A DNA stretch of 64,000 nt, from the sequence record LR756508.1. One strand, written 5' to 3'. Numbering within the stretch: position 1 is the first letter of the stretch; the number at the start of each line of letters is the position of its first letter. The position numbers were made by a program, and so were the translations under genes. The notes under the pieces were generated by a model. The model saw only the letters and a program-made list of their open reading frames with translations. It was not told where the DNA came from and ran no database searches. Below are positions 3,052 to 30,886 of this stretch, piece after piece.

Positions 3052-3711
3052 ATGGATTTTGTTAAGAAGTTCAAATATAAAAGTACAAAGCATGTCCCTT
3101 GGAGTCGAGAGGATTACAGGAAGTCCGACTGCCATTCTGATATAAGTTTTTTTGAAGGAAAAGAAGTTGTAATCACAGAAAAGATGGATGGCGAGGTGAG
3201 CAATATCTACCATGATGGATCTTTTCATGCCCGTTCACTTAACACACCTTATCATCCCTCTAGAGAATGGGCTGGACGTGTAGCTGGAGAGATTGGATTC
3301 AAGCTTCCAGGGGGTTGGAGAATCTGCGCAGAGAATGTTTATGCAAAGCACTCCATAAAGTATGATGACCTTAAAGCCTACATTCAAGCATTCTCGATCT
3401 GGAATAACGAGAACAGATGTTTAGACTGGGATCAGACAGAAGAATGGTGTAACCTCCTTGATATCGAACACGTTCCTGTTATCTGGAGAGGTGAGTATGA
3501 CCGCAAATTTATAGAAAACAAGTTCACACACAATAAACTTTGCGAAATGCGGGGCAGGGAGGTTGAAGGTTATGTGATGAGAACTGTTGATGGTTTTCAT
3601 TATAATGAGTTCGAAAAACATCTTGCCAAGTTTGTTCGCCAAAACCACGTTCAAACGAGCGAGCACTGGAGAAAGAAAAAAGTTGAACCAAATAAACTTA
3701 AATCGGAGTAA
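3052..3711 (+). CDS. ATP-dependent RNA ligase (short nucleotidyltransferase-domain-only type)
   Basis: Motif I EKMDG, motif III ENVY, IIIa AFSIW, IV EGYV, V KFVR. Confidence 0.85.
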   Translation: MDFVKKFKYKSTKHVPWSREDYRKSDCHSDISFFEGKEVVITEKMDGEVSNIYHDGSFHARSLNTPYHPSREWAGRVAGEIGFKLPGGWRICAENVYAKHSIKYDDLKAYIQAFSIWNNENRCLDWDQTEEWCNLLDIEHVPVIWRGEYDRKFIENKFTHNKLCEMRGREVEGYVMRTVDGFHYNEFEKHLAKFVRQNHVQTSEHWRKKKVEPNKLKSE

Positions 3712-3732
3712 TTAAAAATCAAACCTTTGGTT

Positions 3733-4131
3733 ATGGACATTTTCTGCGAAATTGATAAGCTTCATGTGGTAAAACTTCAAGATACTTTTGGATTATCACT
3801 AAACTGCAGACTCACTGTTACTCTTTGTAAGGATAAACAAAGCATGAGTTATGAAGTTTTCAACTATCTAAGAGACAATAACTGCTACGTCGAGCCATTG
3901 GAGAGAAATGATGAAGAAGTTTCGAAAGAAACAAAAAATAACAACTCTCTTCAAGTAGGAAGTAAGACTTCAATCGCTAAAGTTCTGATTACGACCACTC
4001 CATTCATTTCTAATGAAAACTTGGATGATAAAATTGAGAATCTGATTGGAGAAATTGAGTCAACAATTCGGTCGGTATATCTTAATATTAATCTTAATTT
4101 AGACGAAACCTATAATATTTCCAATGCTTAA
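3733..4131 (+). CDS. Hypothetical protein
   Basis: ORF coupled to the neighbouring genes. Confidence 0.55.
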   Translation: MDIFCEIDKLHVVKLQDTFGLSLNCRLTVTLCKDKQSMSYEVFNYLRDNNCYVEPLERNDEEVSKETKNNNSLQVGSKTSIAKVLITTTPFISNENLDDKIENLIGEIESTIRSVYLNINLNLDETYNISNA

Positions 4132-4459
4132 TATTTTTCTTGATGACAGTCGTAATCCAGAAGATGTTTATGGCGAAGGAGACGAGAGGGACTGGATAAT
4201 CTGCAGAAATCCATTTGAATTTAAAGAGGTTTTAAGAAACGAAAACTTGGATAACCGAAATCTTTTTGTGAGTTTTGACCATGACCTCGGAGAAGATGAG
4301 GACGATAAGTTAACTGAAACTGGCATGGACTGTGCGAAGTGGCTCGTTGAACAAAATATTGTTCCAGCCGATTACAACGTACACTCTGCGAATCCAGTAG
4401 GAGCAGAAAACATCCGCGTTTATATTAAAAACTGGATTGAATTTAATCAAGATGCTTAA
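4124..4459 (+). CDS. Cyclic-phosphate-processing receiver-domain protein (cREC-like)
   Basis: IFLDD-R-P, SFDHDLG, TGMDCAKWL, VHSANPVGAENI motif series. Confidence 0.8.
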   Translation: MLNIFLDDSRNPEDVYGEGDERDWIICRNPFEFKEVLRNENLDNRNLFVSFDHDLGEDEDDKLTETGMDCAKWLVEQNIVPADYNVHSANPVGAENIRVYIKNWIEFNQDA

Positions 4460-5090
4460 TCATCCGTTTTTTCGAAGCTTAGTTTCAAGCTTGCCAGTTC
4501 TTGGCTTCTGGTCTGTTGAAATTTTGATATGGGGAACTCTGCTTGTTCTTATTCCAGAGTCGACTCTTAGTTTGCCACTTGCCTTCTTCCTTTTATTCTT
4601 CTATCCAGTCCATCCTTACCTGTATAACTCCTCGAAGTTTTTCTCTAAAACGTTAAACAAAGAATTTAAAAAAAAGTATGGAAGCAAAGGCGTTCTTGCA
4701 AACTACAATGACGTTAAAGATTGGAAAGAAAAAGACGAACTCGAAGCCAAATTTTGGAGAAGCATAAAAAACAGAAAAGGTGAAGAAATTTACTGGAAAG
4801 AAGTTGAAGCTAGTTTTAACGAACCTGAGTATACGAAGTTCTATTTTCGTGGAATCTCTAGTCCAAACTATTTCATTCTTGAAGATATCTCTGGAGACCT
4901 ACATGAGGTTCATCACTGTGAGTTTCTGGACTTAACAAATAAAACCCATAAAGAAAGACTAAACGCCGAAAAACAAAAGGAGTTAAAACGAAAATTAAAA
5001 GAAGGAACTGTCTTCGAGAAAAGTCTACAAGAGCTCGAAGATAATTCAGTTAACGAGGTTTCATTCAAAAAGCTAAAAACAGGGGAGTGA
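4452..5090 (+). CDS. Hypothetical membrane protein
   Basis: Two N-terminal hydrophobic segments followed by a soluble domain. Confidence 0.6.
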   Translation: MLNHPFFRSLVSSLPVLGFWSVEILIWGTLLVLIPESTLSLPLAFFLLFFYPVHPYLYNSSKFFSKTLNKEFKKKYGSKGVLANYNDVKDWKEKDELEAKFWRSIKNRKGEEIYWKEVEASFNEPEYTKFYFRGISSPNYFILEDISGDLHEVHHCEFLDLTNKTHKERLNAEKQKELKRKLKEGTVFEKSLQELEDNSVNEVSFKKLKTGE

Positions 5091-6007
5091 GTACTTTTGA
5101 TGTCACCACAATTTATATGACCCAAGGCGTCCCTGCCTCTGGAAAAACCACATGGGCTCGCCAGAAGTTAAGAGAAGAGAATAGGATTAAACGCATCTGC
5201 AAGGATGATCTGCGTGACATGCTAGACAACGGAGAGTTTAACATGAAAAACGAACGTTATGTCTTGGATATGAGAAATGAAATGGTCGAAAGTGCACTTC
5301 TTCGAGGCAATGACATAATTCTTGATGATACAAACTTTAGCGACGACCATTGGAAAGCCATGCGAGATATTGCTAAACGCGTCGGAAATGTAAAAGTTGT
5401 TGAAATCTATTTTGAGGTAAGCCTCAAAGAAGCCAAGAAAAGAAATGAAAAAAGAAAAGAGACTGAAAGAGTTCCTGAACACATCATAGAAAACATGTTT
5501 GAAAAACACGTCAGGGGTGGAACTTCAGTATCGCAGCGAGAGGAGTTCTTTCCGAAAGCAGATCATCCTCATAGTCAAAGTCAAGCTGAAATTTTGACCG
5601 AGAGTTTTATAGTAGATTTGGATGGAACTTTAGCCTTGAACAATTCAGGTAGAGAATATAATGAGTTTCTTAAGGTTAAAGAAGATGACCCTAACATCCC
5701 TGTAGTAAGAATAGTGAATAAACTTTATGAGAGCTATGAGGATCTGGTTATCGTTACTGGACGTTCAGAGGAATGTAGAAAAGAATGCAGGGAGTGGTTA
5801 AATGTTTTTGAAATCCCTTTCGATCTGCTTTGTATGAGAGGCAAGCACGACTCGCGCCGAGACTCTGACGTAAAAAAGGAGATATACTGGGAAGTCATTC
5901 ACGATAGCCATTTTGTAAACTTTGTTATCGATGACAGGATGAGTGTAGTGAATATGTGGAGGTCACTTGGTATTCCTACTCTTCAAGTGTCTAAAGGCAC
6001 ATTTTAA
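5087..6007 (+). CDS. pseT: Polynucleotide 5'-kinase / 3'-phosphatase (T4 PseT-like)
   Basis: Walker A GVPASGKT, kinase DDTN, HAD DLDGT, VTGR and IDDR motifs; GTG start. Confidence 0.92.
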   Translation: MSTFDVTTIYMTQGVPASGKTTWARQKLREENRIKRICKDDLRDMLDNGEFNMKNERYVLDMRNEMVESALLRGNDIILDDTNFSDDHWKAMRDIAKRVGNVKVVEIYFEVSLKEAKKRNEKRKETERVPEHIIENMFEKHVRGGTSVSQREEFFPKADHPHSQSQAEILTESFIVDLDGTLALNNSGREYNEFLKVKEDDPNIPVVRIVNKLYESYEDLVIVTGRSEECRKECREWLNVFEIPFDLLCMRGKHDSRRDSDVKKEIYWEVIHDSHFVNFVIDDRMSVVNMWRSLGIPTLQVSKGTF

Positions 6008-6224
6008 GCCTCGAACTCAAATCTTCTCATACTCTCCTGTATTTAGAAATGATATACTATTGGTTTTTTGACCTAATTTTTTAAGCTCAGAAAAAGCTTG
6101 CCACAGGTTTTGTCTCTTGTACGTAAATTAAAAGTGCTTCTGTTTAGCATTATAAAACTTTTAACCATCAACTTTTCATATTATCGAAAATTAAAAAAGT
6201 TTCAAAAAGGTAATCAGAAATATT

Positions 6225-6497
6225 ATGACTGAAAACAATCTTAGTAAAAAGAAAATCTTAAAGCTTGCAAAGGGTATAAAAGAGAACGAGAATAATGGAA
6301 ATTTATCAGTCTCAGGAGTATACGTAGGAGGTGAAATTGGTTTTCCTTTAAGATTATTCTCTGAAGAAAGTGAGGTTAATCCTGGAGAACCCAAAAATTA
6401 TTCTAACGCCTACGATAAGGCTTGTTCAGTTCTGGATACTGAGAAGTGTTATTCATATGCTGAACAAGGTTTTGTATGGTTTGGCATCAAAGCTTAA
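6225..6497 (+). CDS. Hypothetical protein
   Basis: 90-aa ORF. Confidence 0.55.
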   Translation: MTENNLSKKKILKLAKGIKENENNGNLSVSGVYVGGEIGFPLRLFSEESEVNPGEPKNYSNAYDKACSVLDTEKCYSYAEQGFVWFGIKA

Positions 6498-6639
6498 TTT
6501 CCTTTAAACTACTTCTGCGAGCTACTATTTTTTCACATCTCTTTTGTACTTTAATTTTATTATTCTTCATACTCTTCTTTTCTTCCTACCTCTCTTTTTC
6601 TTTCCCTGCTTTTTTTCTTTAGTTTTCCATATTAGAGAA

Positions 6640-6675
6640 CTTAAGTACTTAAGAGTTAAAGAGTACTTGAGTACT
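6640..6675. repeat. Palindrome cluster (CTTAAGTACTTAAG plus two more AGTACT)
   Basis: Perfect 14-bp palindrome 6640-6653; AGTACT at 6644, 6662 and 6670. Confidence 0.8.
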
Positions 6676-6683
6676 GAAGTAGT

Positions 6684-7006
6684 AGAGAAAGCCCATAGCA
6701 CGTCCTCCCATCTACAGCTTCTCAGTTTGGCCGACTTATAGCCTTTCGGTTACAGTTTACAACATCTTATAAGCTGAGGTAGGGTTTTCTTACTCGTCCT
6801 TATGGCTGTAACTAACGCAGTACAGTCGCGAGTTACTAAAACTTGTAACCACCCTCCATATTTTTTTAGGTGCTAAAAGCCAACTACTCCGTGTCATTGG
6901 AGCTATGGAAGCTTGATCTCGGAGTTTTGAGTAACCATCCTGCGTCCCGTCTTGATACTTTTTTATCAGTCGGTCTCGTCGCTGGTCAACGCACAGGAGA
7001 CAGGAT
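6684..7006 (+). ncRNA. Unassigned multi-stem structured RNA candidate
   Basis: ORF-free, GC-richer than its flanks; nested stems 6686-6694/6782-6790, 6721-6725/6774-6778, 6735-6740/6768-6773, 6805-6810/6821-6826, 6941-6945/6989-6993; G-U pairs favour the + strand. Confidence 0.5.
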
Positions 7007-7486
7007 TTTAATTGAGAACGATGTTCAAAGTTAGATATAAAAAGTCATTTGCTCAGCCATCCAAATTAAAAATCTTTGCAGAAATTTTGCTATTTAGAAA
7101 TAGTTAACTTTGAATGACTCGAATTTTCTAATCAGCGGTGATACTGTATCCATCTATGAAGATGCGTTCACTGCTATAATATCGAAAATGCAGAAGTAGT
7201 TAAAATAAATGAAGATGACCTTCAAGATTAGGATATAAGCTTGATTTGAGATCGAAAAGACCGAATATCGTAAGACTCTTCATATGTAAAACAACTCATT
7301 TCTTTGCGGGAAACCAGAATTTGAGTAAAAGCACTACCTGGTTAAGATACAGTAACTAAAAAAATACTAATATATGCTTAAACTGTTGAGTTTCAGCAAA
7401 TTCTAATAAACAAGGAAACAAGGTCTATTTCAACCAGTACTTATTTTTGAATCATATATCATAATAGTTTTTAAGGGAAAATAATA

Positions 7487-7831
7487 ATGGATGGTTACTC
7501 AGAAAAAGAACTCGAAGCGGCTTACGAGACGTGGGAACCTACAGGACTACTCGCTGGTTTTGAAAAGAATGAAGCATCTAAACTTGCCGTTCAGCTCAGT
7601 GACTGCTATAATTTTGTAGAAGAAGAAAATCCAGACCTTGACAGAACTAATGGGTATGTTTTTCCTTGTATGTGCAAGGTTTTTGATCAGACTGGCTCTC
7701 TCGATATCGACTACAAGGCAATTCACACTTCCATTCAAAAAGAACTGGATGAAAATAATCCCGATTTAGAAGATATTGAAGAAGAGTCTGAGTTCTTGAA
7801 TGGGATTGTTGATGATCATTTGGAGAGTTGA
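7487..7831 (+). CDS. Small protein resembling the N-terminal region of T4-like major capsid proteins
   Basis: WEPTGLLAGF...LAVQL...FPCMCKVF pattern. Confidence 0.5.
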   Translation: MDGYSEKELEAAYETWEPTGLLAGFEKNEASKLAVQLSDCYNFVEEENPDLDRTNGYVFPCMCKVFDQTGSLDIDYKAIHTSIQKELDENNPDLEDIEEESEFLNGIVDDHLES

Positions 7832-7888
7832 GAAAATTCTGGGTTCAATAGTGATGTGCAGTAAGTTAAATGAAAGCTAAATGTAATC

Positions 7889-8068
7889 ATGTTTGTTGAA
7901 GTTGTAAATTTCGAAGAAGTTGAAAATGGGGGGGCTGATTTAGAGGTCGAATGTGACAGAGAATTTATCGATTTAGCAAAAGATCACACCGAAAAAGAAA
8001 ACGATACGGATGCTGTTCGAGAGTTCATAGTTGAAAGTATTCTTCAAAAAGCTAATACAACTGAATGA
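7889..8068 (+). CDS. Small acidic hypothetical protein (59 aa)
   Basis: MFVEVVNFEEVENGGADLEVECDREF...; stop overlaps the next ATG (ATGA); below the ORF-track cutoff. Confidence 0.65.
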   Translation: MFVEVVNFEEVENGGADLEVECDREFIDLAKDHTEKENDTDAVREFIVESILQKANTTE

Positions 8069-8532
8069 GTTACGTTAGTCTTGAGTCTGAAGAAGTGTTT
8101 CCACATGATTTAGAGAACTCTGAAGTCGAAAAAGTTGAAAACACCGGAAAGACAAAAAATATTCCCGATTCATTTCAAGTTCCAGCGGACAAAGAGCAGC
8201 TTTTAAACATCCTGTTCATTCGGGTAAATCAAATAGTGCGCGATTTATTTGGATTGAAAGAAAGAATTGAGTCGCTTGAATCGAAGTCAGATGAAAACGG
8301 AAATTCAATATTTCAGCTCCGACAAGAGCTTGAAAGCGCTCAAAATATAGTTTTGGATGCGAAAACAAAAGAAGAGATCGAGGATAAAGTTCAAGATTTA
8401 GAAGCAAAGTCTTTTGAAGTCCGAAATGAACTTAAAAATGCAGAGGACAAGGTAAAAAACATAAAGCCCGATATAGAAAAAACAAAAGAGGCAATGTATA
8501 AGTTCTTTAAAGCGATAGGAAAAGGTCACTGA
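8065..8532 (+). CDS. Coiled-coil hypothetical protein
   Basis: Heptad-rich E/K/L sequence. Confidence 0.65.
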   Translation: MSYVSLESEEVFPHDLENSEVEKVENTGKTKNIPDSFQVPADKEQLLNILFIRVNQIVRDLFGLKERIESLESKSDENGNSIFQLRQELESAQNIVLDAKTKEEIEDKVQDLEAKSFEVRNELKNAEDKVKNIKPDIEKTKEAMYKFFKAIGKGH

Positions 8533-8566
8533 GGGTGATTCTAATATTGCCTAAATTGAGAAATAG

Positions 8567-8968
8567 ATGACAAGCAAAAAAGAACTTTCTGCTGAAAACG
8601 CGAAAGACCTAAAAAATAAGACTGATACGTTTACGCAGCAGGACAAAATTTCTTTGGATTTTTTATACCAAAGAATACGAGCTGCAGCGAGCCGAGGAGA
8701 CGCAATGATTACTATTAGCTCCAAAAACAAGACTGACGACAGCCAGAGCCACCGAAACACCACCGATAAAATTTTAGGAAGTGGAAACAGGATCGATAGA
8801 GATGTTTTCGAAAAACTGGAGGAACTTGACTTTCGAGTAAAGGAGTATGAACAGCCGCTTTCTAAAGGCCATTGGAAAACGCAAATTTCCTGGAGGGACA
8901 GCGACCTAGCGAAGTTTTCTTCTTTTGCTTTTGGGCTTCGGCACGGTGGCGGCTTTCCGATTGTTTAG
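8567..8968 (+). CDS. Hypothetical protein
   Basis: 133-aa ORF. Confidence 0.6.
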   Translation: MTSKKELSAENAKDLKNKTDTFTQQDKISLDFLYQRIRAAASRGDAMITISSKNKTDDSQSHRNTTDKILGSGNRIDRDVFEKLEELDFRVKEYEQPLSKGHWKTQISWRDSDLAKFSSFAFGLRHGGGFPIV

Positions 8969-9031
8969 ATGCTGGAAAGAAAATATCTTTGGAAACAAGT
9001 CTCGACTCAAGGTATTTAACAGAATTGGAAT

Positions 9032-9119
9032 AGAGAGAGATGCGAGATGGCTCTCGCTACTGACTTGAAATCAGTGGGAACCTGAAATATGGTTTGGGGA
9101 TCGAAACCTCCTCTCTCTG
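9032..9119 (+). tRNA. tRNA-Ser(TGA), non-canonical 8/4 cloverleaf with Sec-like D arm
   Basis: Acceptor AGAGAGAG/CTCTCTCT (8 bp), 6-bp D stem with TGGC loop, anticodon loop CT-TGA-AA, long V arm, 4-bp T stem with ATCGAAA loop, G73, no CCA. Confidence 0.85.
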
Positions 9120-9127
9120 CAACACAA

Positions 9128-9202
9128 GCGGGTGTAGATCAAGCGGCAGATCACTGGACTTCCATTCCAGAGGTTTTGTAGTTTCGACTACTACCACCCG
9201 CT
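9128..9202 (+). tRNA. tRNA-Gly(TCC)
   Basis: GCGGGTG/CACCCGC acceptor, loop CT-TCC-AT, TTCGACT T loop, U73, no CCA. Confidence 0.9.
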
Positions 9203-9208
9203 CTTTTA

Positions 9209-9264
9209 AGGCTGCTAACAGCAATTCTCCTTATCCTTTTTTTGGATAAAAGGAACGCAGCCTG
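9209..9264 (+). ncRNA. Armless tRNA-like element
   Basis: 7-bp stem AGGCTGC/GCAGCCT plus G, then TAACAGCAA, then a 6-bp stem TTATCC/GGATAA closing a 7-nt T7 loop; no D or T arm. Confidence 0.55.
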
Positions 9265-9287
9265 TTTTTAGTTTGATTAATAGTCTT

Positions 9288-9378
9288 GGAGGAGTGGCAG
9301 AGCTCGGTTTAATGCGTCTCACTGCTACTGAGATTGGCTTGAATCATAGTCACGCAGGTTCAAATCCTGCCTCCTCCG
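9288..9378 (+). tRNA. tRNA-Ser(GCT), canonical 7/5
   Basis: GGAGGAG/CTCCTCC acceptor, loop CT-GCT-AC, long V arm, GCAGG-TTCAAAT-CCTGC T arm, G73, no CCA. Confidence 0.92.
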
Positions 9379-9410
9379 CTTTTTCTGTCTAGAAAATAGT
9401 TACAATTTTT

Positions 9411-9713
9411 ATGAATGCGATAAGAAAAAAATTCTTGGACTTACGTAAGACCTGGATAAAAGAAACAGGTCACGTGGCTTCCCCCAAAGAGCGAGCAAAT
9501 CATCCTGCGTACCAGCAGATAATTGGAATGGGTCCGAAGGTGGTTCCCTTTTTGATTCGGGACCAAATTGAAAATAACACGCACTGGTTCTGGGCACTTC
9601 AATCCATCACAGGCGAGAACCCCATAGAGGAAAAACATGAAGGGTACGTTCAAAAAATGGCACAAGACTGGAATGAGTGGTGGGATGAGCAGTTGGCGCT
9701 GAGTGATTCTTAA
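9411..9713 (+). CDS. Conserved small helical hypothetical protein
   Basis: HPAYQQIIGMGPKVVPFL...HWFWALQSITGENP; GC-richer than the genome average. Confidence 0.7.
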   Translation: MNAIRKKFLDLRKTWIKETGHVASPKERANHPAYQQIIGMGPKVVPFLIRDQIENNTHWFWALQSITGENPIEEKHEGYVQKMAQDWNEWWDEQLALSDS

Positions 9714-9748
9714 GAAAGATAAAGTTTGAGGGTCTGCTCAACTATTAA

Positions 9749-10531
9749 GTGTATCTTTTAAAATGGTTTGAGAAAATAAATAAGATCTCGAATCTGATAA
9801 CCGAAGATGAGTATAAAACAAAGGATGGAAGAATTTTAAGTTTTAAGTTTGAAGAAAACGTAGAAAACACAGAAAGAAAAGGTTTTGTTATCCATAAACT
9901 TGACGCTTTTTTTGAGCCTCAATCAGAGGCTTTTTCTTCTGGTAAGCATGTTGGATATATTAAAGTAATTTACATACCCACTGAAAACGTTGACCAATAT
10001 TACCCAACAACGCTTCATTTTATCGATCTAGCAAAAGGATGGCAACTTTTAGACTATAAAAGTTTTTCCGAACCTGGAGAGTATCCAGGTCACGAAGAGT
10101 TTGCCAAAAAAGCTCATAATAGGGCAAGAAGTAACCCTTATAAGCGAGTTAAAGACTTTCCTGAATATAGTGAATATGAGAGTATAACTGATAAGAGATG
10201 GGAAGAACTTGCTAAATATTACAGAGATGAGATAAGAAAAACTTTCAAAGAAGACTTTGAAAGGTATTTAAACTATTACGTTGATAAACCTGTTGTTGAA
10301 TATATTAAAGTAAAAAAACAGTTCAGGAGGAACCGAGTGGGTTTTAATCTATATAAGAAAATGGCGAAAATTCTTGGAAATAAAGGAATGGTTCTTTATG
10401 CCAGTGGAACTCAAAGCGAGTATGCTGAGAAAGCCTGGAAAAAGCTTAGAGACGTTCTTCCAGTGAAAACCAAAAAGATTAAATTACCTTCGGGGGGCTC
10501 AGAAACGAGATATTTCATAGATTACCGATAA
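9749..10531 (+). CDS. Hypothetical protein with possible C-terminal GNAT-like fold
   Basis: VEYIKVKKQFRRNRVGFNLYKKM...ASGTQSEYAEKAW resembles GNAT motif A/B. Confidence 0.45.
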   Translation: MYLLKWFEKINKISNLITEDEYKTKDGRILSFKFEENVENTERKGFVIHKLDAFFEPQSEAFSSGKHVGYIKVIYIPTENVDQYYPTTLHFIDLAKGWQLLDYKSFSEPGEYPGHEEFAKKAHNRARSNPYKRVKDFPEYSEYESITDKRWEELAKYYRDEIRKTFKEDFERYLNYYVDKPVVEYIKVKKQFRRNRVGFNLYKKMAKILGNKGMVLYASGTQSEYAEKAWKKLRDVLPVKTKKIKLPSGGSETRYFIDYR

Positions 10532-10606
10532 ATATACTCTTTAACTTCAAATAAAAAAAAAACTGCATAATACTATGAAAATGAATTTTCATCTTGTGAG
10601 CAGTAG

Positions 10607-11038
10607 ATGAGAAACATCGCTGTAATTCTAATCTTTTCAATTCAATTATTAGGATTTACAGCGTTAGAGGGGGACAAAGAAGAAGCGTTTCCGAGATATT
10701 TTTATAAGGTAAATCCAAATCCAAAGATAACTGAAAACATAAATCACGAGGGCAAGGGGCATTTTTACGATCTTGTAAACATGAGCGGGGATACCTTAAA
10801 CGTATACGTCCAAGGAGTCGTCAAGGGCAGCGTCGAGCCTGACTATAAAAGAGCTTCTAAAGCCGATCTTGTAATATGGTGTTTTCCTCAAGAATATTCG
10901 CATCCAAGTCACGTCTTTCCTGAAGCACAAGGAAGAATCTTGATTCAGGAGAAAAATGGGGAAGTGGTAGTTGCAAGTGAATCATTTTTGAAGAGTAATG
11001 ACCTCTGGAACGGTCATAGCTATAAGATGTTAAATTAA
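10607..11038 (+). CDS. Hypothetical secreted protein
   Basis: N-terminal signal-peptide-like MRNIAVILIFSIQLLGFTA. Confidence 0.6.
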   Translation: MRNIAVILIFSIQLLGFTALEGDKEEAFPRYFYKVNPNPKITENINHEGKGHFYDLVNMSGDTLNVYVQGVVKGSVEPDYKRASKADLVIWCFPQEYSHPSHVFPEAQGRILIQEKNGEVVVASESFLKSNDLWNGHSYKMLN

Positions 11039-11072
11039 ATGCTAATCTCTTTGAACTGAAAGCATCTGCCCC

Positions 11073-12281
11073 ATGTCAACTTTTGAGGTCCCAATTAAGA
11101 AGGTTCAAATTAAAAATCATCCAAATGCTGATCGGCTTTCTATTGCAGAAATCCAAGGAACAGAATATCAATCTTTAGTTGGAATTGGAGAATACGAGTC
11201 GGGAGATCTTGTGGCTTATATTCCTGAAGATTCTATCGTTCCAGAGTGGATTCAAGAAAAGCTTGGAGTGAAAGGAAAGCTTGCAGGATCTGACAAAAAC
11301 CGAATTCGTAGTGTTCGTCTTAGGGGGGTATATTCGCAGGGGCTCTGCTTTCCTGTTGAGAATATAACCAACCATCCGGAGTTTGATGATGGATACTATA
11401 TTTTTCGTGAGAGTAGAGCGCTGGATGGAAGGCTCAGTGAGATCGATAAGAACTATAGCGTTGATCCGCTTTACAAAAAAGTGGAAGTTGGAGATGACGT
11501 TCAAGACTTTCTTGGAATTGAAAAGTATGAACCTCCTGTGCCCGTTCACATGAGCGGAGAAGTGTTTAACGCTCGGGGCAACACCTTGAAGTACGATATT
11601 GAGAACTTCCGAAAGTATCCTGATGTCCTTGAGGAAGGTGAGGAAGTTGTGGTAATGGAGAAGCTCCATGGCACCTTTTGCTGCATTGGTGTGGTTCCCC
11701 AAGACGAAGCTTCCAGTTCTTCGGGACGCCACATTGTTACATCTAAAGGTCTTTCAGCCAAAGGGCTGGCCTTGAAGCTAAATGAAAAGAATGAAGACAA
11801 TGTTTACATTCGTGCAGCCAGAAAATACAAGCTCTTAGAGAAGCTTTCGCAAAAAGAGGAAGGTTATTATTATATCCTCGGAGAAGTTTTTGGTCGAAAG
11901 ATTCAAGACCTTGAGTATGGAGCAGAAAGAGATGAGCTATTTTTCCGAGTCTTCGATATTTATAAAGGATCTCCAAAACGCGGGAGTGAAGGAAGATATC
12001 TCAACGACGATGAACTTGATGAAGAAATTAATAGGTTCGGTCTAAAAAGAGTTCCCGTTTTTTATCGGGGACCTTATTCAAAGGAAAACGTTTCAAGGTT
12101 TGTAAGCGGCCAGGAAACAGTTTCTGGGGAAGAAAATCACATGCGAGAGGGAGTTGTTGTTCGCCCTACAGAAGAGCGACATGTCGAAGAAAACCTTCCG
12201 ATGGGTGGTCGCGTTCAATTGAAGTGGAAGAGTGAAGAATACAAGCTCAGAAATGAAAAGACAGCTACAGAAAGACGTTAA
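11073..12281 (+). CDS. RNA ligase, DRB0094/Rnl2-related family with N-terminal tRNA-binding-like domain
   Basis: N-terminal HPNADRL...GDLVAYIPEDS; motifs EKLHG, GEVFG, FDIY, EGVV, LKWKS. Confidence 0.9.
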   Translation: MSTFEVPIKKVQIKNHPNADRLSIAEIQGTEYQSLVGIGEYESGDLVAYIPEDSIVPEWIQEKLGVKGKLAGSDKNRIRSVRLRGVYSQGLCFPVENITNHPEFDDGYYIFRESRALDGRLSEIDKNYSVDPLYKKVEVGDDVQDFLGIEKYEPPVPVHMSGEVFNARGNTLKYDIENFRKYPDVLEEGEEVVVMEKLHGTFCCIGVVPQDEASSSSGRHIVTSKGLSAKGLALKLNEKNEDNVYIRAARKYKLLEKLSQKEEGYYYILGEVFGRKIQDLEYGAERDELFFRVFDIYKGSPKRGSEGRYLNDDELDEEINRFGLKRVPVFYRGPYSKENVSRFVSGQETVSGEENHMREGVVVRPTEERHVEENLPMGGRVQLKWKSEEYKLRNEKTATERR

Positions 12282-12282
12282 T

Positions 12283-13685
12283 GAATGTTCAATTCATCCG
12301 GATGAATTGAACCACTACTATTTACAAGAAAGTATTATTATTCGAATTTTCTTTTAAATCACATGAAACTGACGAAAACGTTGAAGTTCAAACTTGAAGA
12401 CTTTTCAAGTCACGGAAGGTACGTCTTAAGCCAGACGCAGAGTCAGTTCCGAAAGTCCGTCAACTTTTATCTCCACCAAGTTGGACGCAAAGGCTCTACA
12501 AACGTAACCGACTACAAGAATGAGTATAAAAGAGCGAGAAACATATTTCAATTGAACTCAGCTTTGATTCAACAGTCGAAAAGGTTTGCGATAAACCAGT
12601 ACAAGTCTTACAAGAACAACGAAAGCAACGACAGTTTTCCACATTTCGAGTCGTTCGTTGACGTCCGTTACGATAACAGAACGATAACCTTCATCGATGA
12701 AAACGAAAAAACTCATGAGCTAAAAGTCACATTAGCCACAACCCAGAGCCGAGTCGAAGCCACGCTTCAAGGAGGAGAATATTGTTTCGAGGAGTTTCAA
12801 GCTGGCGAGTTTCAAGATGCCAGGCTCTATCGTCAAGATGGCGACTGGTATTTAAACGTTCATGTTCAAAGAGAGGCCGAAATTTCCAAAGCCAGAGATT
12901 CTGAGTTCTATATTGGTGTTGATCTTGGAGTCAACAACCTGGCAACAGTTGCAGTTCAAAACCGAAGGGGAGAAGTAATCGAGACAAAGTTTTTCGACGG
13001 GTCTTACGTGAGCGAAAAAAAGCGAAGGTTCAACGCCAAACGTCACGAATACATGCGGAAAGGTTTGTGGTCAAAGCTCAAAGAGACTCGCGGGAAGGAA
13101 AAGCGTTTCATCAAAGACGTCAACCACAAAATCTCAAAACACGTCAAAGATTTATGTGAGAAATACGAAAACTCAACTGTCGTATTAGAGAATCTTGACG
13201 GCATCCGTAACATCATAAATTACAACAGAAAACAGAATCGAAGATTGCACAACTGGAGCTTCAGTCAGCTCCAAGAGTTTATCATCTACAAAGCTCACGA
13301 AGCTGGAAGTTCTTATAGACGAGTTCCACCCTTCAACACTTCTCAAGTTTGTGGGAGTTGCTTCAACTCAATTTCCCGAAGCTCGGAGAACAGGGTTGTC
13401 GGAACTTGTGAAACCTGCAAGAAAGAGGTATTGAACGTGGATCTCAACGCAGCAGTTAATATTGTTCAACGTTTTTGGTATTACGTAATTCAGGACAACC
13501 TCGAAGACACTGTACCAGAAACTGAGCTACGTGAATTTAGCTCGGAGGGTTCGAAGCCTGAACTCCATCAAGGAAGCTTTGACGGCAAAGTCGACACCGC
13601 TGCGGTTGATTCAGAGAATCAACTCGTGTCGTCATTGAGCTTGAGCTTGCCTTGAAGCCCCCATCCTTGGACGGGAGTCATTCAC
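12283..13685 (+). mobile_element. tnpB-only IS200/IS605-family element 1
   Basis: TTAAT target 12278-12282, palindromic left end 12287-12312, right end GAAGCCCCCATCCTTGGACGGGAGTCATTCAC ending at 13685; no tnpA. Confidence 0.8.
12363..13655 (+). CDS. tnpB: RNA-guided endonuclease TnpB (Cas12f-like)
   Basis: RuvC I GVDLG, RuvC II VLENL, Zn finger CGSC/CETC, RuvC III NVDLNAA. Confidence 0.92.
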   Translation: MKLTKTLKFKLEDFSSHGRYVLSQTQSQFRKSVNFYLHQVGRKGSTNVTDYKNEYKRARNIFQLNSALIQQSKRFAINQYKSYKNNESNDSFPHFESFVDVRYDNRTITFIDENEKTHELKVTLATTQSRVEATLQGGEYCFEEFQAGEFQDARLYRQDGDWYLNVHVQREAEISKARDSEFYIGVDLGVNNLATVAVQNRRGEVIETKFFDGSYVSEKKRRFNAKRHEYMRKGLWSKLKETRGKEKRFIKDVNHKISKHVKDLCEKYENSTVVLENLDGIRNIINYNRKQNRRLHNWSFSQLQEFIIYKAHEAGSSYRRVPPFNTSQVCGSCFNSISRSSENRVVGTCETCKKEVLNVDLNAAVNIVQRFWYYVIQDNLEDTVPETELREFSSEGSKPELHQGSFDGKVDTAAVDSENQLVSSLSLSLP

Positions 13686-14236: not shown

Positions 14237-14324
14237 AGAGGGTAAACTAGTGTTTGGCCTGCTAGGACAGACTCGAAATCTGTGCGTACCAAACTGGTAT
14301 GTGGTTCAAATCCACTGCCCTCTG
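14237..14324 (+). tRNA. tRNA-Ser(CGA), 8/4 cloverleaf
   Basis: Acceptor AGAGGGTA/TGCCCTCT (8 bp), T stem GTGG/CCAC (4 bp) with TTCAAAT loop, loop CT-CGA-AA, long V arm, G73, no CCA. Confidence 0.88.
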
Positions 14325-14419
14325 CTAAAAAAGTTGGTTCTAAAACCAAAAAAATAACAGTTTCTGTTATTTAAAGAATGGTAAACTGGTAGAATCGATA
14401 TGCATTTTTCAATATAAAA

Positions 14420-30433: not shown

Positions 30434-30877
30434 GGGACTGATACGGCTTCGACATCTTGTATGGAGTTGGAGCCACTACCTGGCGCAACATATGAGCGCC
30501 GTAAAGAAATTGAATATGAATCTATAACTGGCGTAAACAACGCTGATTACGAGTCTGCTGGATTTACGGCAGAGGACTTCGCACAGATGGACGGCGAAAG
30601 CCTCTATCATGGTAGCGAGCGTAAGCCTGCTGCTGTGTAAGTGAAGTTTTGGACTTGATTTAAAAGTCCACTCCATCGTTCCCCAACGCAGATAAGGATC
30701 GAACGGTGTCATATTTATCTGCTTGAGTAGACTGGCTGGCATCTGCCATTCTGCCGACATTTGAAGATGCCTGCTCCGTTTTGTGAATTTTGGGAGCTAA
30801 AACTAAATTCACTATGGTAGTGAACAATGGCAATAGCAAAGACAAGATGGACTCGGGTTCGACTCCCGACAGTTCCA
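30434..30877 (+). ncRNA. ssrA: tmRNA
   Basis: GGGACTG/CAGTTCC acceptor with G3-U70, A discriminator, 5' GATACGGCTTCGAC, P2 ATCTTGT/ACAAGAT, T arm TCGGG-TTCGACT-CCCGA; tag frame 30530-30640. Confidence 0.93.
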
Positions 30878-30886
30878 GATTCCAGG

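What the first reader, a model, noticed from the sequence alone, without database searches (positions are those of the whole stretch)
6684..7006. Unassigned ~320-nt highly structured non-coding RNA
Seen: at least three multi-helix domains, including nested AGAAAGCCC/GGGTTTTCT, CTCAG/CTGAG, CTTATA/TATAAG; GCTGTA/TACAGT; GTTAC/GTAAC; CCATA/TATGG enclosing CTCC/GGAG; TGCGT/ACGCA enclosing TGATA/TATCA. It is GC-richer than its flanks, has no credible ORF, and is preceded by TACTTA at 6646. I could not match it to a group I/II intron core, tmRNA, SRP or a riboswitch. Inference: a possibly new phage ncRNA class.
Basis: partly seen in the sequence, partly recalled or inferred. Interest (0 to 1): 0.65.

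Follow-up and report, generated by a model that had tools for sequence, protein, structure and literature searches.

The report
New structured RNA in huge phage
A roughly 340-base stretch with no gene for a protein, lying in the RNA-repair region of a 484-kb phage from desert salt rock, is kept almost unchanged in related phages and keeps its base-paired stems through matching double mutations, so it is very probably a new folded RNA whose job is still unknown.

Summary
The window is part of LR756508.1, a 484-kb uncultured phage from a halite metagenome. Window 6678-7020 (+ strand) holds no reading frame under any stop-codon reading and matches no Rfam family in three lineages. Folding energy alone is unremarkable (z = -0.11), so "highly structured" cannot be claimed from one sequence.

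Comparison settles it. Eight distinct homologues in three lineages sit at the same place, just after a conserved 90-aa gene. In the closest lineage the element is 88-98% identical, against 77-90% for neighbouring genes and 50-70% for flanking non-coding DNA.

Several stems keep pairing through changes on both sides: P2, P4, Py, P6 and P9. G-U pairs fix the strand as +. Two invariant 5-mers 235 nt apart are complementary, a candidate pseudoknot.

One (the outer stem) is doubtful and two are not supported.

The element is single-copy. It survived intact while three downstream genes were deleted. It lies among RNA ligase, cREC, PNKP and tRNA genes.

Best reading: a new stable, compactly folded phage ncRNA, possibly tied to RNA repair. 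No RNA data exist, and function is inferred only.

The parts
6225..6497 (+). Conserved 90-aa gene of unknown function, always just upstream of the element in lineages A, B, C and L025. Possible protein partner (inferred only).
   Evidence: 45% identical to the 97-aa gene before the lineage-C element. Family alignments A5 and A7. Only 10 hits in 1.8 billion representatives. No Pfam or PHROG hit. No fold match: best Z 4.1.
6498..6635 (+). Pyrimidine-rich, G-poor spacer (80% C+T, 5% G). Its composition is conserved but its sequence is not. It may be a Rho-loading (rut-like) tract or an unstructured leader (inferred).
   Evidence: Composition is the same in lineages A and B (78-80% pyrimidine, 3-7% G) against a genome background of 44% and 22%. 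Sequence identity is only 49-75%.
6636..6679 (.). Palindrome and repeat block: a 14-nt perfect palindrome at 6640-6653 and a tandem GAGTACT at 6662-6676. Candidate promoter or operator of the RNA gene (inferred).
   Evidence: Unique in the 64-kb window. Kept in lineage A; lineages B, L025 and C carry TTAAG/AAGTA-like words at the same place.
6678..7020 (+). The conserved RNA element, about 340 nt here and 418 nt in lineage C.
   Evidence: Alignments A1, A4 and A6. Identity profile. Single copy in the 484-kb genome.
6688..6699 (+). 5' motif AAAGCCCATAGC, the most conserved word. It is present even in the 20-nt fragment at the end of contig L025.
6710..6720 (+). P2, 5' strand. Pairs with 6771-6780.
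   Evidence: Base (A-U, U-G, C-G) invariant. The upper pairs differ among lineages A, B and C yet stay paired. Three to five positions carry double changes.
6771..6780 (+). P2, 3' strand.
6731..6736 (+). Candidate pseudoknot, 5' strand (CCGAC + 1), inside the loop closed by P2. Pairs with 6968-6973.
   Evidence: Five invariant pairs in all 8 sequences. The sixth pair is U-A in lineages A and B and G-C in lineage C. The same changed base can instead pair within the base of hairpin P3 (6733-6736 with 6754-6757), so the two pairings are not resolved.
6968..6973 (+). Candidate pseudoknot, 3' strand (1 + GTCGG).
6739..6752 (+). P3 hairpin. Its sequence and length differ in each lineage, but a hairpin always follows the CCGAC word.
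6792..6797 (+). Py, 5' strand. Pairs with 6828-6833 and carries hairpin P4.
   Evidence: Outer pair is A-U (4 sequences), G-U (1) and G-C (2). The pair at local 120-151 is U-G in lineages A and B and G-C in lineage C.
6805..6826 (+). P4 hairpin: 6-bp stem with a 10-nt loop that keeps the word TAAC.
   Evidence: 97.6-97.9% of cells paired. One pair is G-C, A-U or C-G in the three lineages, and the next is U-A or C-G (and 82 corrected for numbering).
6828..6833 (+). Py, 3' strand.
6834..6936 (+). Variable central domain: P5, P6 (6855-6860 with 6904-6909) enclosing two small hairpins, and P7. Lineage C has a different arrangement here.
   Evidence: P6 has one A-U to G-C double change in L010 and L026, and P6b has one. 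The lineage-C sequence does not align here.
6937..7006 (+). 3' domain. It is closed by P9 (6937-6941 with 7002-7006) stacked on Px (6942-6945 with 6989-6992). It carries a conserved 9-nt bulge holding GGAGAC (6993-7001), hairpin P8 (6953-6968) and the invariant word TCGCTGGTCAACGCA (6979-6993).
   Evidence: Px is invariant and pairable in all lineages. The innermost P9 pair is U-A in lineage A and C-G in lineages B and C. Lineage C carries a ~65-nt extra stem-loop between P8 and the pseudoknot strand.
7005..7037 (+). T-run directly after the closing stem, then a short conserved tail with a small hairpin. Probable 3' end or terminator region (inferred).
   Evidence: ATTTTA is kept in lineages A, B and C, and the word GAACGA is kept after it. 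The simple terminator scan does not call it.
7100..7486 (+). Not part of the RNA. This is the scar of a ~2.6-kb deletion that removed three genes present in relatives.

Best explanation
Window 6678-7020 (+) is the gene of a previously undescribed, stable, compactly folded non-coding RNA of about 340 nt. It is specific to a small clade of huge phages of hypersaline habitats.

Shown:
- It is non-coding and single-copy.
- It is under stronger purifying selection than the adjacent protein genes.
- It has a conserved secondary structure on the + strand: a 5' domain (P2, P3), a Py-P4 arm with a conserved TAAC loop, a lineage-variable central domain, and a 3' domain closed by P9/Px with a conserved GGAGAC bulge.

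Inferred:
- The invariant CCGAC in the 5' domain pairs with the invariant GTCGG in the 3' domain. This pseudoknot would lock the two halves into one globular fold.
- The RNA is made from its own promoter in the palindrome block and ends at the T-run after the closing stem.
- It acts in trans as an RNA or RNA-protein particle, perhaps with the 90-aa protein encoded just upstream.
- Its task belongs to the surrounding RNA-repair and tRNA module (RNA ligase, cREC, PNKP, tRNAs, second RNA ligase). It could be a scaffold or a decoy in the contest with host nucleases that cut tRNAs.
For: Non-coding.

No known family.

Conservation: 88-98% identity inside the element, against 77-90% in PNKP, 85-95% in the 90-aa gene and 49-75% in flanking non-coding DNA. 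Blocks are still recognisable where the 90-aa protein is only 45% identical. A covariance model built from lineages A and B finds lineage C at E = 0.006.

Structure: 92.7% of cells are paired. Six pairs carry changes on both sides, against 2.1 +/- 1.1 in shuffles (0 of 500 reach this) and 0-3 when partners are slid. The picture is the same with lineage C added.

Strand: conserved G-U pairs occur in P2, Py, P4 and other stems.

Independence from downstream genes: three genes were deleted in this phage while the element stayed intact, and the arrangement is confirmed by an independent contig. The downstream genes also differ in lineages B and C.

Single copy.

Context: RNA ligase, cREC, PNKP, tRNAs and a second RNA ligase. 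Such modules in jumbo phages, and an RNA partner in Ro/TROVE repair particles, are described in PMC7824862.
Against: No transcript evidence at all: no RNA run holds this phage.

The sample is small: eight distinct sequences, six of them close, so few evolutionary events stand behind the covariation.

Folding energy is not better than shuffles.

The outer stem P1 and hairpin P5 are not supported, and P8 is lost in lineage B.

The pseudoknot rests on invariant bases plus one flanking double change, and that change is equally explained by the base of P3.

A fourth lineage (L028) has the small protein gene but no element after it, so the protein-RNA link is not obligatory.

The 90-aa protein shows no RNA-binding fold.

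The phage has no Ro/TROVE protein.

The promoter and terminator are not called by the consensus scans.

The link to RNA repair is by neighbourhood only.
Confidence: 0.6

Rival explanations
1. A cis-acting RNA element rather than a free RNA. It could be a structured 3' UTR, a processing or stability element, or a complex terminator of the 90-aa gene's mRNA. Alternatively it could be a leader (riboswitch-like sensor) for whatever gene lies downstream.
For: Fixed position directly after the 90-aa gene in lineages A, B, C and L025. All genes lie on the same strand, so co-transcription is likely. No promoter is called before the element. A closing stem followed by a T-run could end the upstream transcript. 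Highly conserved junction bases would also fit a ligand pocket.
Against: The downstream genes differ between lineages, and here they were deleted without decay of the element, which argues against a leader. A 120-150 nt G-poor pyrimidine spacer, kept in composition, separates it from the upstream gene. 340-420 nt with a lineage-specific expansion segment is large for a UTR element. Lineage D keeps the small gene without the element.
Confidence: 0.22
2. A DNA-level element: a replication origin, packaging site, or dense cluster of protein-binding sites. The apparent stems would then be incidental.
For: A palindrome and tandem repeats sit at 6640-6676, next to a polypyrimidine/polypurine tract. 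No transcript has been seen. Folding energy is ordinary.
Against: Compensatory double changes keep the stems, and conserved G-U pairs work on one strand only. There are no iterons or internal repeats within 6678-7020. Cumulative GC skew shows no turn here.
Confidence: 0.07
3. A non-functional relic or a recently exchanged mobile sequence (for example a decayed intron or small mobile element). Its high identity would then reflect recent transfer rather than selection.
For: Identity in lineage A is very high, while collections outside this clade hold no copy.
Against: The syntenic position is the same in every lineage, and divergence is graded in step with the neighbouring protein: 96%, 72% and 45% protein identity against ~93%, 77% and block-wise nucleotide identity. 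There are no terminal repeats, no target duplication and no split host gene. It is single-copy. No intron family is matched.
Confidence: 0.05
4. It encodes one or more very small proteins.
For: Stop-free stretches of 26-49 codons exist on the + strand.
Against: None is kept in position or frame across lineages A, B and C. Substitutions show no third-position excess. The ATG at 7021 opens 29 codons here, but only 5 in relatives.
Confidence: 0.02

Closest known systems
GOLLD and ROOL RNAs (large ornate bacterial and phage RNAs, Rfam RF01998 / RF03087)
   Same: A large, multi-domain non-coding RNA with pseudoknot(s). It is carried by phages, lies in the neighbourhood of tRNA genes, and has unknown function (PMC5737381; cryo-EM in 10.1101/2024.12.08.627333).
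   Different: No sequence or structure match at E <= 10. It is shorter (340-418 nt against ~580 and ~800). It is known from one narrow phage clade only. Nothing is known about self-assembly.
Bacterial Y RNAs (YrlA/YrlB) with Ro60/Rsr in RNA-repair loci
   Same: A non-coding RNA encoded beside RNA-repair enzymes. Some jumbo phages carry the Ro/TROVE platform with a tRNA-like RNA partner (PMC7824862).
   Different: No TROVE protein is found anywhere in the 484-kb genome. There is no tRNA-like module by ARAGORN and no Y-RNA family hit. The 5' and 3' ends do not form the long Ro-binding stem. It is about three times longer.
Bacterial RNase P RNA
   Same: Similar size (330-400 nt). It has a conserved purine-rich word near the 5' end, a long-range pairing of invariant words that would tie the two halves together, and tRNA genes nearby.
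   Different: No match to any RNase P model, even at E <= 10, in three lineages. The resemblance of the 5' word is from memory only and is not kept in lineage C.
phi29-type packaging RNA and T4 stable RNAs C and D
   Same: Phage-encoded stable RNAs that are not translated. The T4 species lie in the tRNA region (own knowledge).
   Different: No Rfam hit to the pRNA family. Sizes differ (117-174 nt). There is no packaging-gene context.

Membership tests
Any Rfam 15 family (4227 models, including RNase P, tmRNA, SRP, 6S, group I/II introns, GOLLD, ROOL, HEARO, OLE, raiA, Y RNA, pRNA, riboswitches, small ribozymes) | Covariance-model score at or above the family's gathering score | tested here: not met
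   Nothing reaches gathering in the region. At E <= 10, only chance hits of 12-17 bits appear against gathering scores of 40-80, and none recurs in lineages B or C.
Group I / group II self-splicing intron | Interrupts a host gene whose two halves rejoin into one frame or RNA; conserved catalytic core | tested here: not met
   The upstream gene ends with its own stop 180 nt before the element, and is complete in lineage D without the element. The downstream genes differ between lineages. No intron model matches.
Ro60/Y RNA repair particle | TROVE-domain protein encoded in the same genome; Y RNA with a terminal Ro-binding stem, and for YrlA a tRNA-like domain | tested here: not met
   No PF05731 match in the whole record, while control genomes rang. 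No tRNA-like call.
Guide or partner RNAs of mobile-element or defence proteins (TnpB/IscB omega RNA, retron msr-msd, bridge RNA, tracrRNA) | Lies directly beside or overlapping the gene of its protein (TnpB/IscB, reverse transcriptase, IS110 recombinase, Cas) | tested here: not met
   The neighbours are a 90-aa unknown protein and PNKP upstream, and unknown small genes downstream. The only TnpB-like gene is 5.3 kb away at 12363-13655.
Conserved structured non-coding RNA (general criteria) | Non-coding; conserved beyond neutral flanks; base pairs kept by compensatory change; strand-specific G-U pairs | tested here: met
   (non-coding). (conservation). (covariation and G-U pairs).
Conserved structured non-coding RNA (general criteria) | A discrete transcript with defined ends | not testable with these tools
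   Only DNA runs hold the phage.
Large ornate RNA class in the sense of GOLLD/ROOL | Multistem junctions plus pseudoknots supported by covariation; self-assembly into RNA-only complexes | tested here: inconclusive
   Multi-domain architecture is supported. The pseudoknot rests on invariant bases and one ambiguous double change. Assembly cannot be tested here.

The most novel reading that the evidence does not exclude
The element is the founding member of a new class of large phage RNAs with a biochemical activity of its own. It could be a ribozyme, an RNA-only assembly, or the RNA core of a particle that works with the phage's RNA ligase/PNKP/cREC repair set or blocks a host tRNA-cutting defence. 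On this reading, its invariant junction words (the 5' AAAGCCCATA word, TTCTCAG...CCGAC, CATCTTAT, the TAAC loop, TCGCTGGTCAACGCA and the GGAGAC bulge) form an active or binding site held together by the CCGAC/GTCGG pseudoknot.
Probability: 0.2. Interest if true: 0.85.

Novelty: new variant of a known kind. Interest (0 to 1): 0.6.

Why it matters
Large, highly conserved, complex-folded RNAs are rare in bacteria and phages, and most of the known ones turned out to be ribozymes, particle cores or, lately, RNA-only cages.

This one sits inside a phage RNA-repair and tRNA island. It was kept intact while neighbouring genes were lost. About a third of its bases are invariant across lineages whose adjacent proteins have fallen to 45% identity.

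That pattern points to a sequence-specific biochemical role rather than a simple regulatory hairpin. If it works with, or against, the tRNA-cleavage arms race, it would add an RNA player to a contest so far described in terms of proteins.

It is small enough (340 nt) for probing, cryo-EM and in-vitro assays with the adjacent ligase, PNKP and 90-aa protein. The limits are a narrow distribution (halite and other metagenomes, no cultured host) and the absence of expression data.

Tried and rejected
Folding energy as evidence of structure: not significant. The z of about -3 for 6560-6719 comes from a pyrimidine tract facing a purine-rich block and was not trusted.

Alternative genetic codes: no frame opens.

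Paralogues in the genome: none by BLAST or by covariance model.

Close relatives:
- IMG/VR: none by two protein scans, a profile scan and three DNA patterns.
- Phage GenBank collection: only the record itself.
- GTDB genomes: none.
- JGI metagenome pattern scan: two hits, both chance matches inside G+C-rich protein genes.

Relatives at 62% PNKP identity (L017-L019, L022) and lineage D (L028): no element by BLAST or model.

Neighbouring proteins (the 90, 114, 249, 337, 340, 130 and 154 aa products): no Pfam or PHROG family.

The 90-aa protein model (pLDDT 79): no fold match by Foldseek or VIA-align.

The outer stem P1 and the P3-base versus pseudoknot choice could not be settled. P9 was first mis-numbered, so helix 12 there is meaningless; it was re-counted. 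The P4 row for lineage C is off by one; the correct pairs are.

RNAalifold on the MAFFT alignments gave unstable structures, because lineage C misaligns in the middle.

Reads: only contigs of DNA runs, so there is no expression information.

Literature: no paper names the record or such an RNA.

Complex prediction was not used, because it does not take RNA.

Full report
SOURCE AND SETTING. The window is identical to bases 62001-126000 of LR756508.1, an unannotated 484,177-bp "uncultured phage" genome. The only public run that holds it is a halite (salt-rock) metagenome. An independent Logan contig of 19 kb from that run covers 5000-9500 without a single difference.

All long frames in the window lie on the + strand under the standard code. 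The window also carries four tRNA genes and a tmRNA.

Around the finding lies an RNA-repair island:
- RNA ligase, 3052-3711.
- cREC (cyclic-phosphate-processing receiver domain), 4124-4459.
- Polynucleotide kinase-phosphatase (PNKP), 5087-6007.
- A 90-aa gene of unknown function, 6225-6497.
- A 989-nt stretch without genes, 6498-7486.
- Small unknown genes.
- tRNA-Ser, tRNA-Gly and tRNA-Ser, 9032-9379.
- A second RNA ligase, 11073-12281.

Such ligase/PNKP/cRec/tRNA sets are described for jumbo phages as a counter to host nucleases that cut tRNAs (PMC7824862).

THE OBSERVATION. The stretch is G+C-richer than its flanks. All six frames are closed by many TAA, TAG and TGA codons, so no reassignment gives a gene.

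By energy, however, the stretch folds no better than shuffled versions: z = -0.11 on the + strand and -1.0 on the minus strand. Sliding windows inside it are also unremarkable. Rfam 15 gives nothing at gathering score, and only chance hits at E <= 10. On a single sequence, then, the claim "highly structured" cannot stand.

HOMOLOGUES. IMG/VR and the phage GenBank collection hold no relative. The 5.8-billion-protein index, however, holds close relatives of PNKP and of the 114-aa gene. Their contigs were fetched. Four lineages emerged.

- Lineage A: the window plus five further distinct sequences (L010, L012, L014, L023, L026). One of these comes from a 468-kb phage assembly.
- Lineage B: L024. 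Its upstream small protein is about 71% identical to the window's.
- Lineage C: L016. Its small protein is 45% identical.
- L025: only the first 20 nt of the element, at a contig end.

In all of these the element lies just after the homologue of the 90-aa gene.

A further lineage D (L028) has the small gene directly followed by another gene, with no element. More distant PNKP relatives (L017-L019, L022) also lack it.

Pattern scans of IMG/VR, JGI metagenomes and GTDB genomes, using words conserved in all three lineages, found no further copy. The two metagenome hits are chance matches within G+C-rich coding sequence.

CONSERVATION. Along the syntenic stretch, identity between the window and the other lineage-A phages is as follows:
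- PNKP: 77-90%.
- The 90-aa gene: 85-95%.
- The non-coding DNA on either side: 49-75%.
- 6647-7006: 88-98%.

Against lineage B the element is 77% identical with no codon periodicity. Against lineage C long words remain identical.

A covariance model of the 5' half, built from lineages A and B only, finds lineage C at E = 0.006 and the L025 fragment at E = 0.09. It finds nothing else in 147 kb of related loci, and nothing else in the whole 484-kb genome.

In this phage the three genes that follow the element in its relatives (249, 337 and 340 aa) have been deleted. Only two remnants of 71-73% identity remain, at 7180-7273 and 7332-7422. Yet the element is intact. Downstream genes also differ in lineages B and C. 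The element is therefore selected for itself, not as a leader of particular downstream genes.

STRUCTURE. Local numbering is the window coordinate minus 6677. On the alignment of lineages A and B, the hand-built structure has 92.7% of cells paired. Six pairs change on both sides, against 2.1 +/- 1.1 in shuffles (0 of 500 reach this) and 0-3 when partners are slid by 1-3 columns. With lineage C added by the model, the 5' half gives the same picture.

Helix by helix:

- P2 (33-36/100-103 and 38-43/94-99). It has an invariant base (A-U, U-G, C-G) and an upper part that is different in sequence but paired in lineages A, B and C.
- P4 (128-133/144-149). One pair is G-C, A-U or C-G in the three lineages. 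The next is U-A or C-G. The closing pair is G-U or A-U. The loop keeps the word TAAC.
- Py (115-120/151-156). It carries P4. Its outer pair is A-U, G-U or G-C. One pair is U-G in lineages A and B and G-C in lineage C.
- P6 (178-183/227-232). It has an A-U to G-C double change in two sequences.
- P9 (260-264/325-329) stacked on the invariant Px (265-268/312-315). Together they close the 3' domain. The innermost P9 pair is U-A in lineage A and C-G in lineages B and C. Between the two 3' strands lies a conserved 9-nt bulge holding GGAGAC.

P3 is a hairpin of different sequence in each lineage. Lineage C has two extra stem-loops that look like expansion segments. The central domain (about local 157-259) is lineage-specific.

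Conserved G-U pairs in P2, Py, P4 and elsewhere would be C-A mismatches on the other strand, so the RNA is read from the + strand.

Not supported:
The pair at local 10-112 is unpaired in 5 of 7 sequences.
- CTCAG/CTGAG.
- The CTTATAAG palindrome.

GTTAC/GTAAC never covaries, and is broken in two sequences by a change that instead fits the outer pair of Py.

A CANDIDATE PSEUDOKNOT. The invariant CCGAC (6731-6735) lies in the loop closed by P2. It is complementary to the invariant GTCGG (6969-6973) in the 3' domain. The next pair outward is U-A in lineages A and B and G-C in lineage C. This would tie the two halves together.

The evidence is thin. The five core pairs never vary, and the same changed base can also pair with the base of P3, which shows the same U-A to G-C switch. 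I report it as a candidate, or as a possible alternative pairing.

ENDS. Conservation begins sharply near 6676-6688. The 5' word AAAGCCCATA is the best-kept part.

Upstream lie a 14-nt perfect palindrome and a tandem GAGTACT, both unique in the window. Lineages B, C and L025 have TTAAG/AAGTA-like words at that place.

Before that comes a spacer of 118-155 nt. It is 78-80% pyrimidine and only 3-7% G in lineages A and B, though its sequence is not conserved. This composition would suit Rho loading, or simply an unstructured RNA.

At the 3' end, the closing stem is followed at once by ATTTTA, kept in all lineages, and then by a short conserved tail to about 7037. The consensus scans call neither a promoter nor a terminator. 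These boundaries are inference.

WHAT IT IS NOT.
- Not any Rfam family.
- Not an intron: no split gene, and the upstream gene is complete without the element in lineage D.
- Not a Y RNA: there is no TROVE protein in the genome and no tRNA-like module.
- Not the partner RNA of a TnpB, reverse transcriptase or Cas gene: none is adjacent, and the nearest TnpB-like gene is 5.3 kb away.
- Not a small-protein gene.

The 90-aa protein belongs to a small family: 10 hits among 1.8 billion representatives. It has no family annotation. Its model (pLDDT 79) finds no solved fold: best Z is 4.1.

HOW IT MOST LIKELY WORKS. Three things are shown:
- A single-copy, non-coding element is under strong purifying selection.
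- Several of its stems are kept by compensatory change on the + strand.
- About a third of its bases are invariant at junctions and loops.

This pattern is typical of RNAs whose three-dimensional fold matters (particle cores, ribozymes, ligand or protein binders), rather than of a simple hairpin regulator.

I therefore commit to a stable, compactly folded, trans-acting RNA made from this locus (about 0.6). The main rival is a cis-acting UTR or terminator element of the 90-aa transcript (about 0.2).

A role in the RNA-repair and tRNA contest is suggested only by the neighbourhood (about 0.2 within the main reading). The RNA could be a scaffold for the ligase/PNKP set or a decoy for a host nuclease. 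The precedent is the Ro-Y RNA repair particle (PMC7824862).

COMPARISON AND NOVELTY. In kind, the closest known RNAs are GOLLD and ROOL. These are large, ornate, phage-borne RNAs near tRNA genes, of unknown function, and recently shown to assemble into RNA-only complexes (PMC5737381; 10.1101/2024.12.08.627333). This element shares neither sequence nor structure with them. It is shorter, and it is known from one narrow clade only.

I file it as a new family within the known kind "large structured phage RNAs of unknown function". It is not a member of any described family.

Interest is moderate to high. It is a real, testable, previously undescribed RNA with signs of a sophisticated fold. Against that stand few sequences, no host, no expression data and no demonstrated function.

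Noticed in passing
window 7100-7486: Scar of a ~2.6-kb deletion. Relatives carry three unknown genes (249, 337 and 340 aa) here. The window keeps only two remnants of 71-73% identity (7180-7273 and 7332-7422). An independent contig confirms the arrangement.
   Followed up: yes
window 6498-6635: Spacer with 80% pyrimidine and 5% G on the + strand. The same composition, but not the same sequence, is kept in lineages A and B. Possibly a Rho-loading tract or a polypurine/polypyrimidine DNA feature.
   Followed up: partly
window 6640-6676: A perfect 14-nt palindrome (6640-6653) and a tandem GAGTACT (6662-6676), both unique in the 64-kb window. They look like an operator or promoter block in front of the RNA.
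   Followed up: partly
window 6225-6497: The 90-aa gene belongs to a very small family of 81-107 aa proteins: 10 hits in 1.8 billion representatives. It has conserved G-F/Y-P-x-R, G-E, A-Y-D and V-W-F words, no Pfam or PHROG family, and no solved fold match.
   Followed up: partly
window 3052-6007 and 9032-12281: RNA-repair island: ATP-dependent RNA ligase, cREC receiver-like domain, kinase-phosphatase PNKP, three tRNA genes, and a second RNA ligase with a PHA02142 OB domain.
   Followed up: partly
window 12363-13655: TnpB-like gene (OrfB_IS605, RuvC and Cas12f-like TNB domains) inside the phage genome, followed by tRNA-Ser(CGA) at 14237-14325. Its guide (omega) RNA was not looked for.
   Followed up: no
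window 30434-30880: Phage-encoded tmRNA (72 bits) with the unusual predicted tag GRRKPLSW.
   Followed up: no
window 7068-7090: A short word (AAAAATCTTTGCAGAAATTT) conserved in lineage A, and partly in lineages B and C, about 50 nt after the element. It may be a promoter or ribosome-site region of the next gene in relatives.
   Followed up: no
L016 7947-8011 (lineage C): The lineage-C RNA carries a ~65-nt extra stem-loop, whose hairpin loop repeats the TAAC word, plus an extra hairpin in the 5' domain. These behave like expansion segments.
   Followed up: partly
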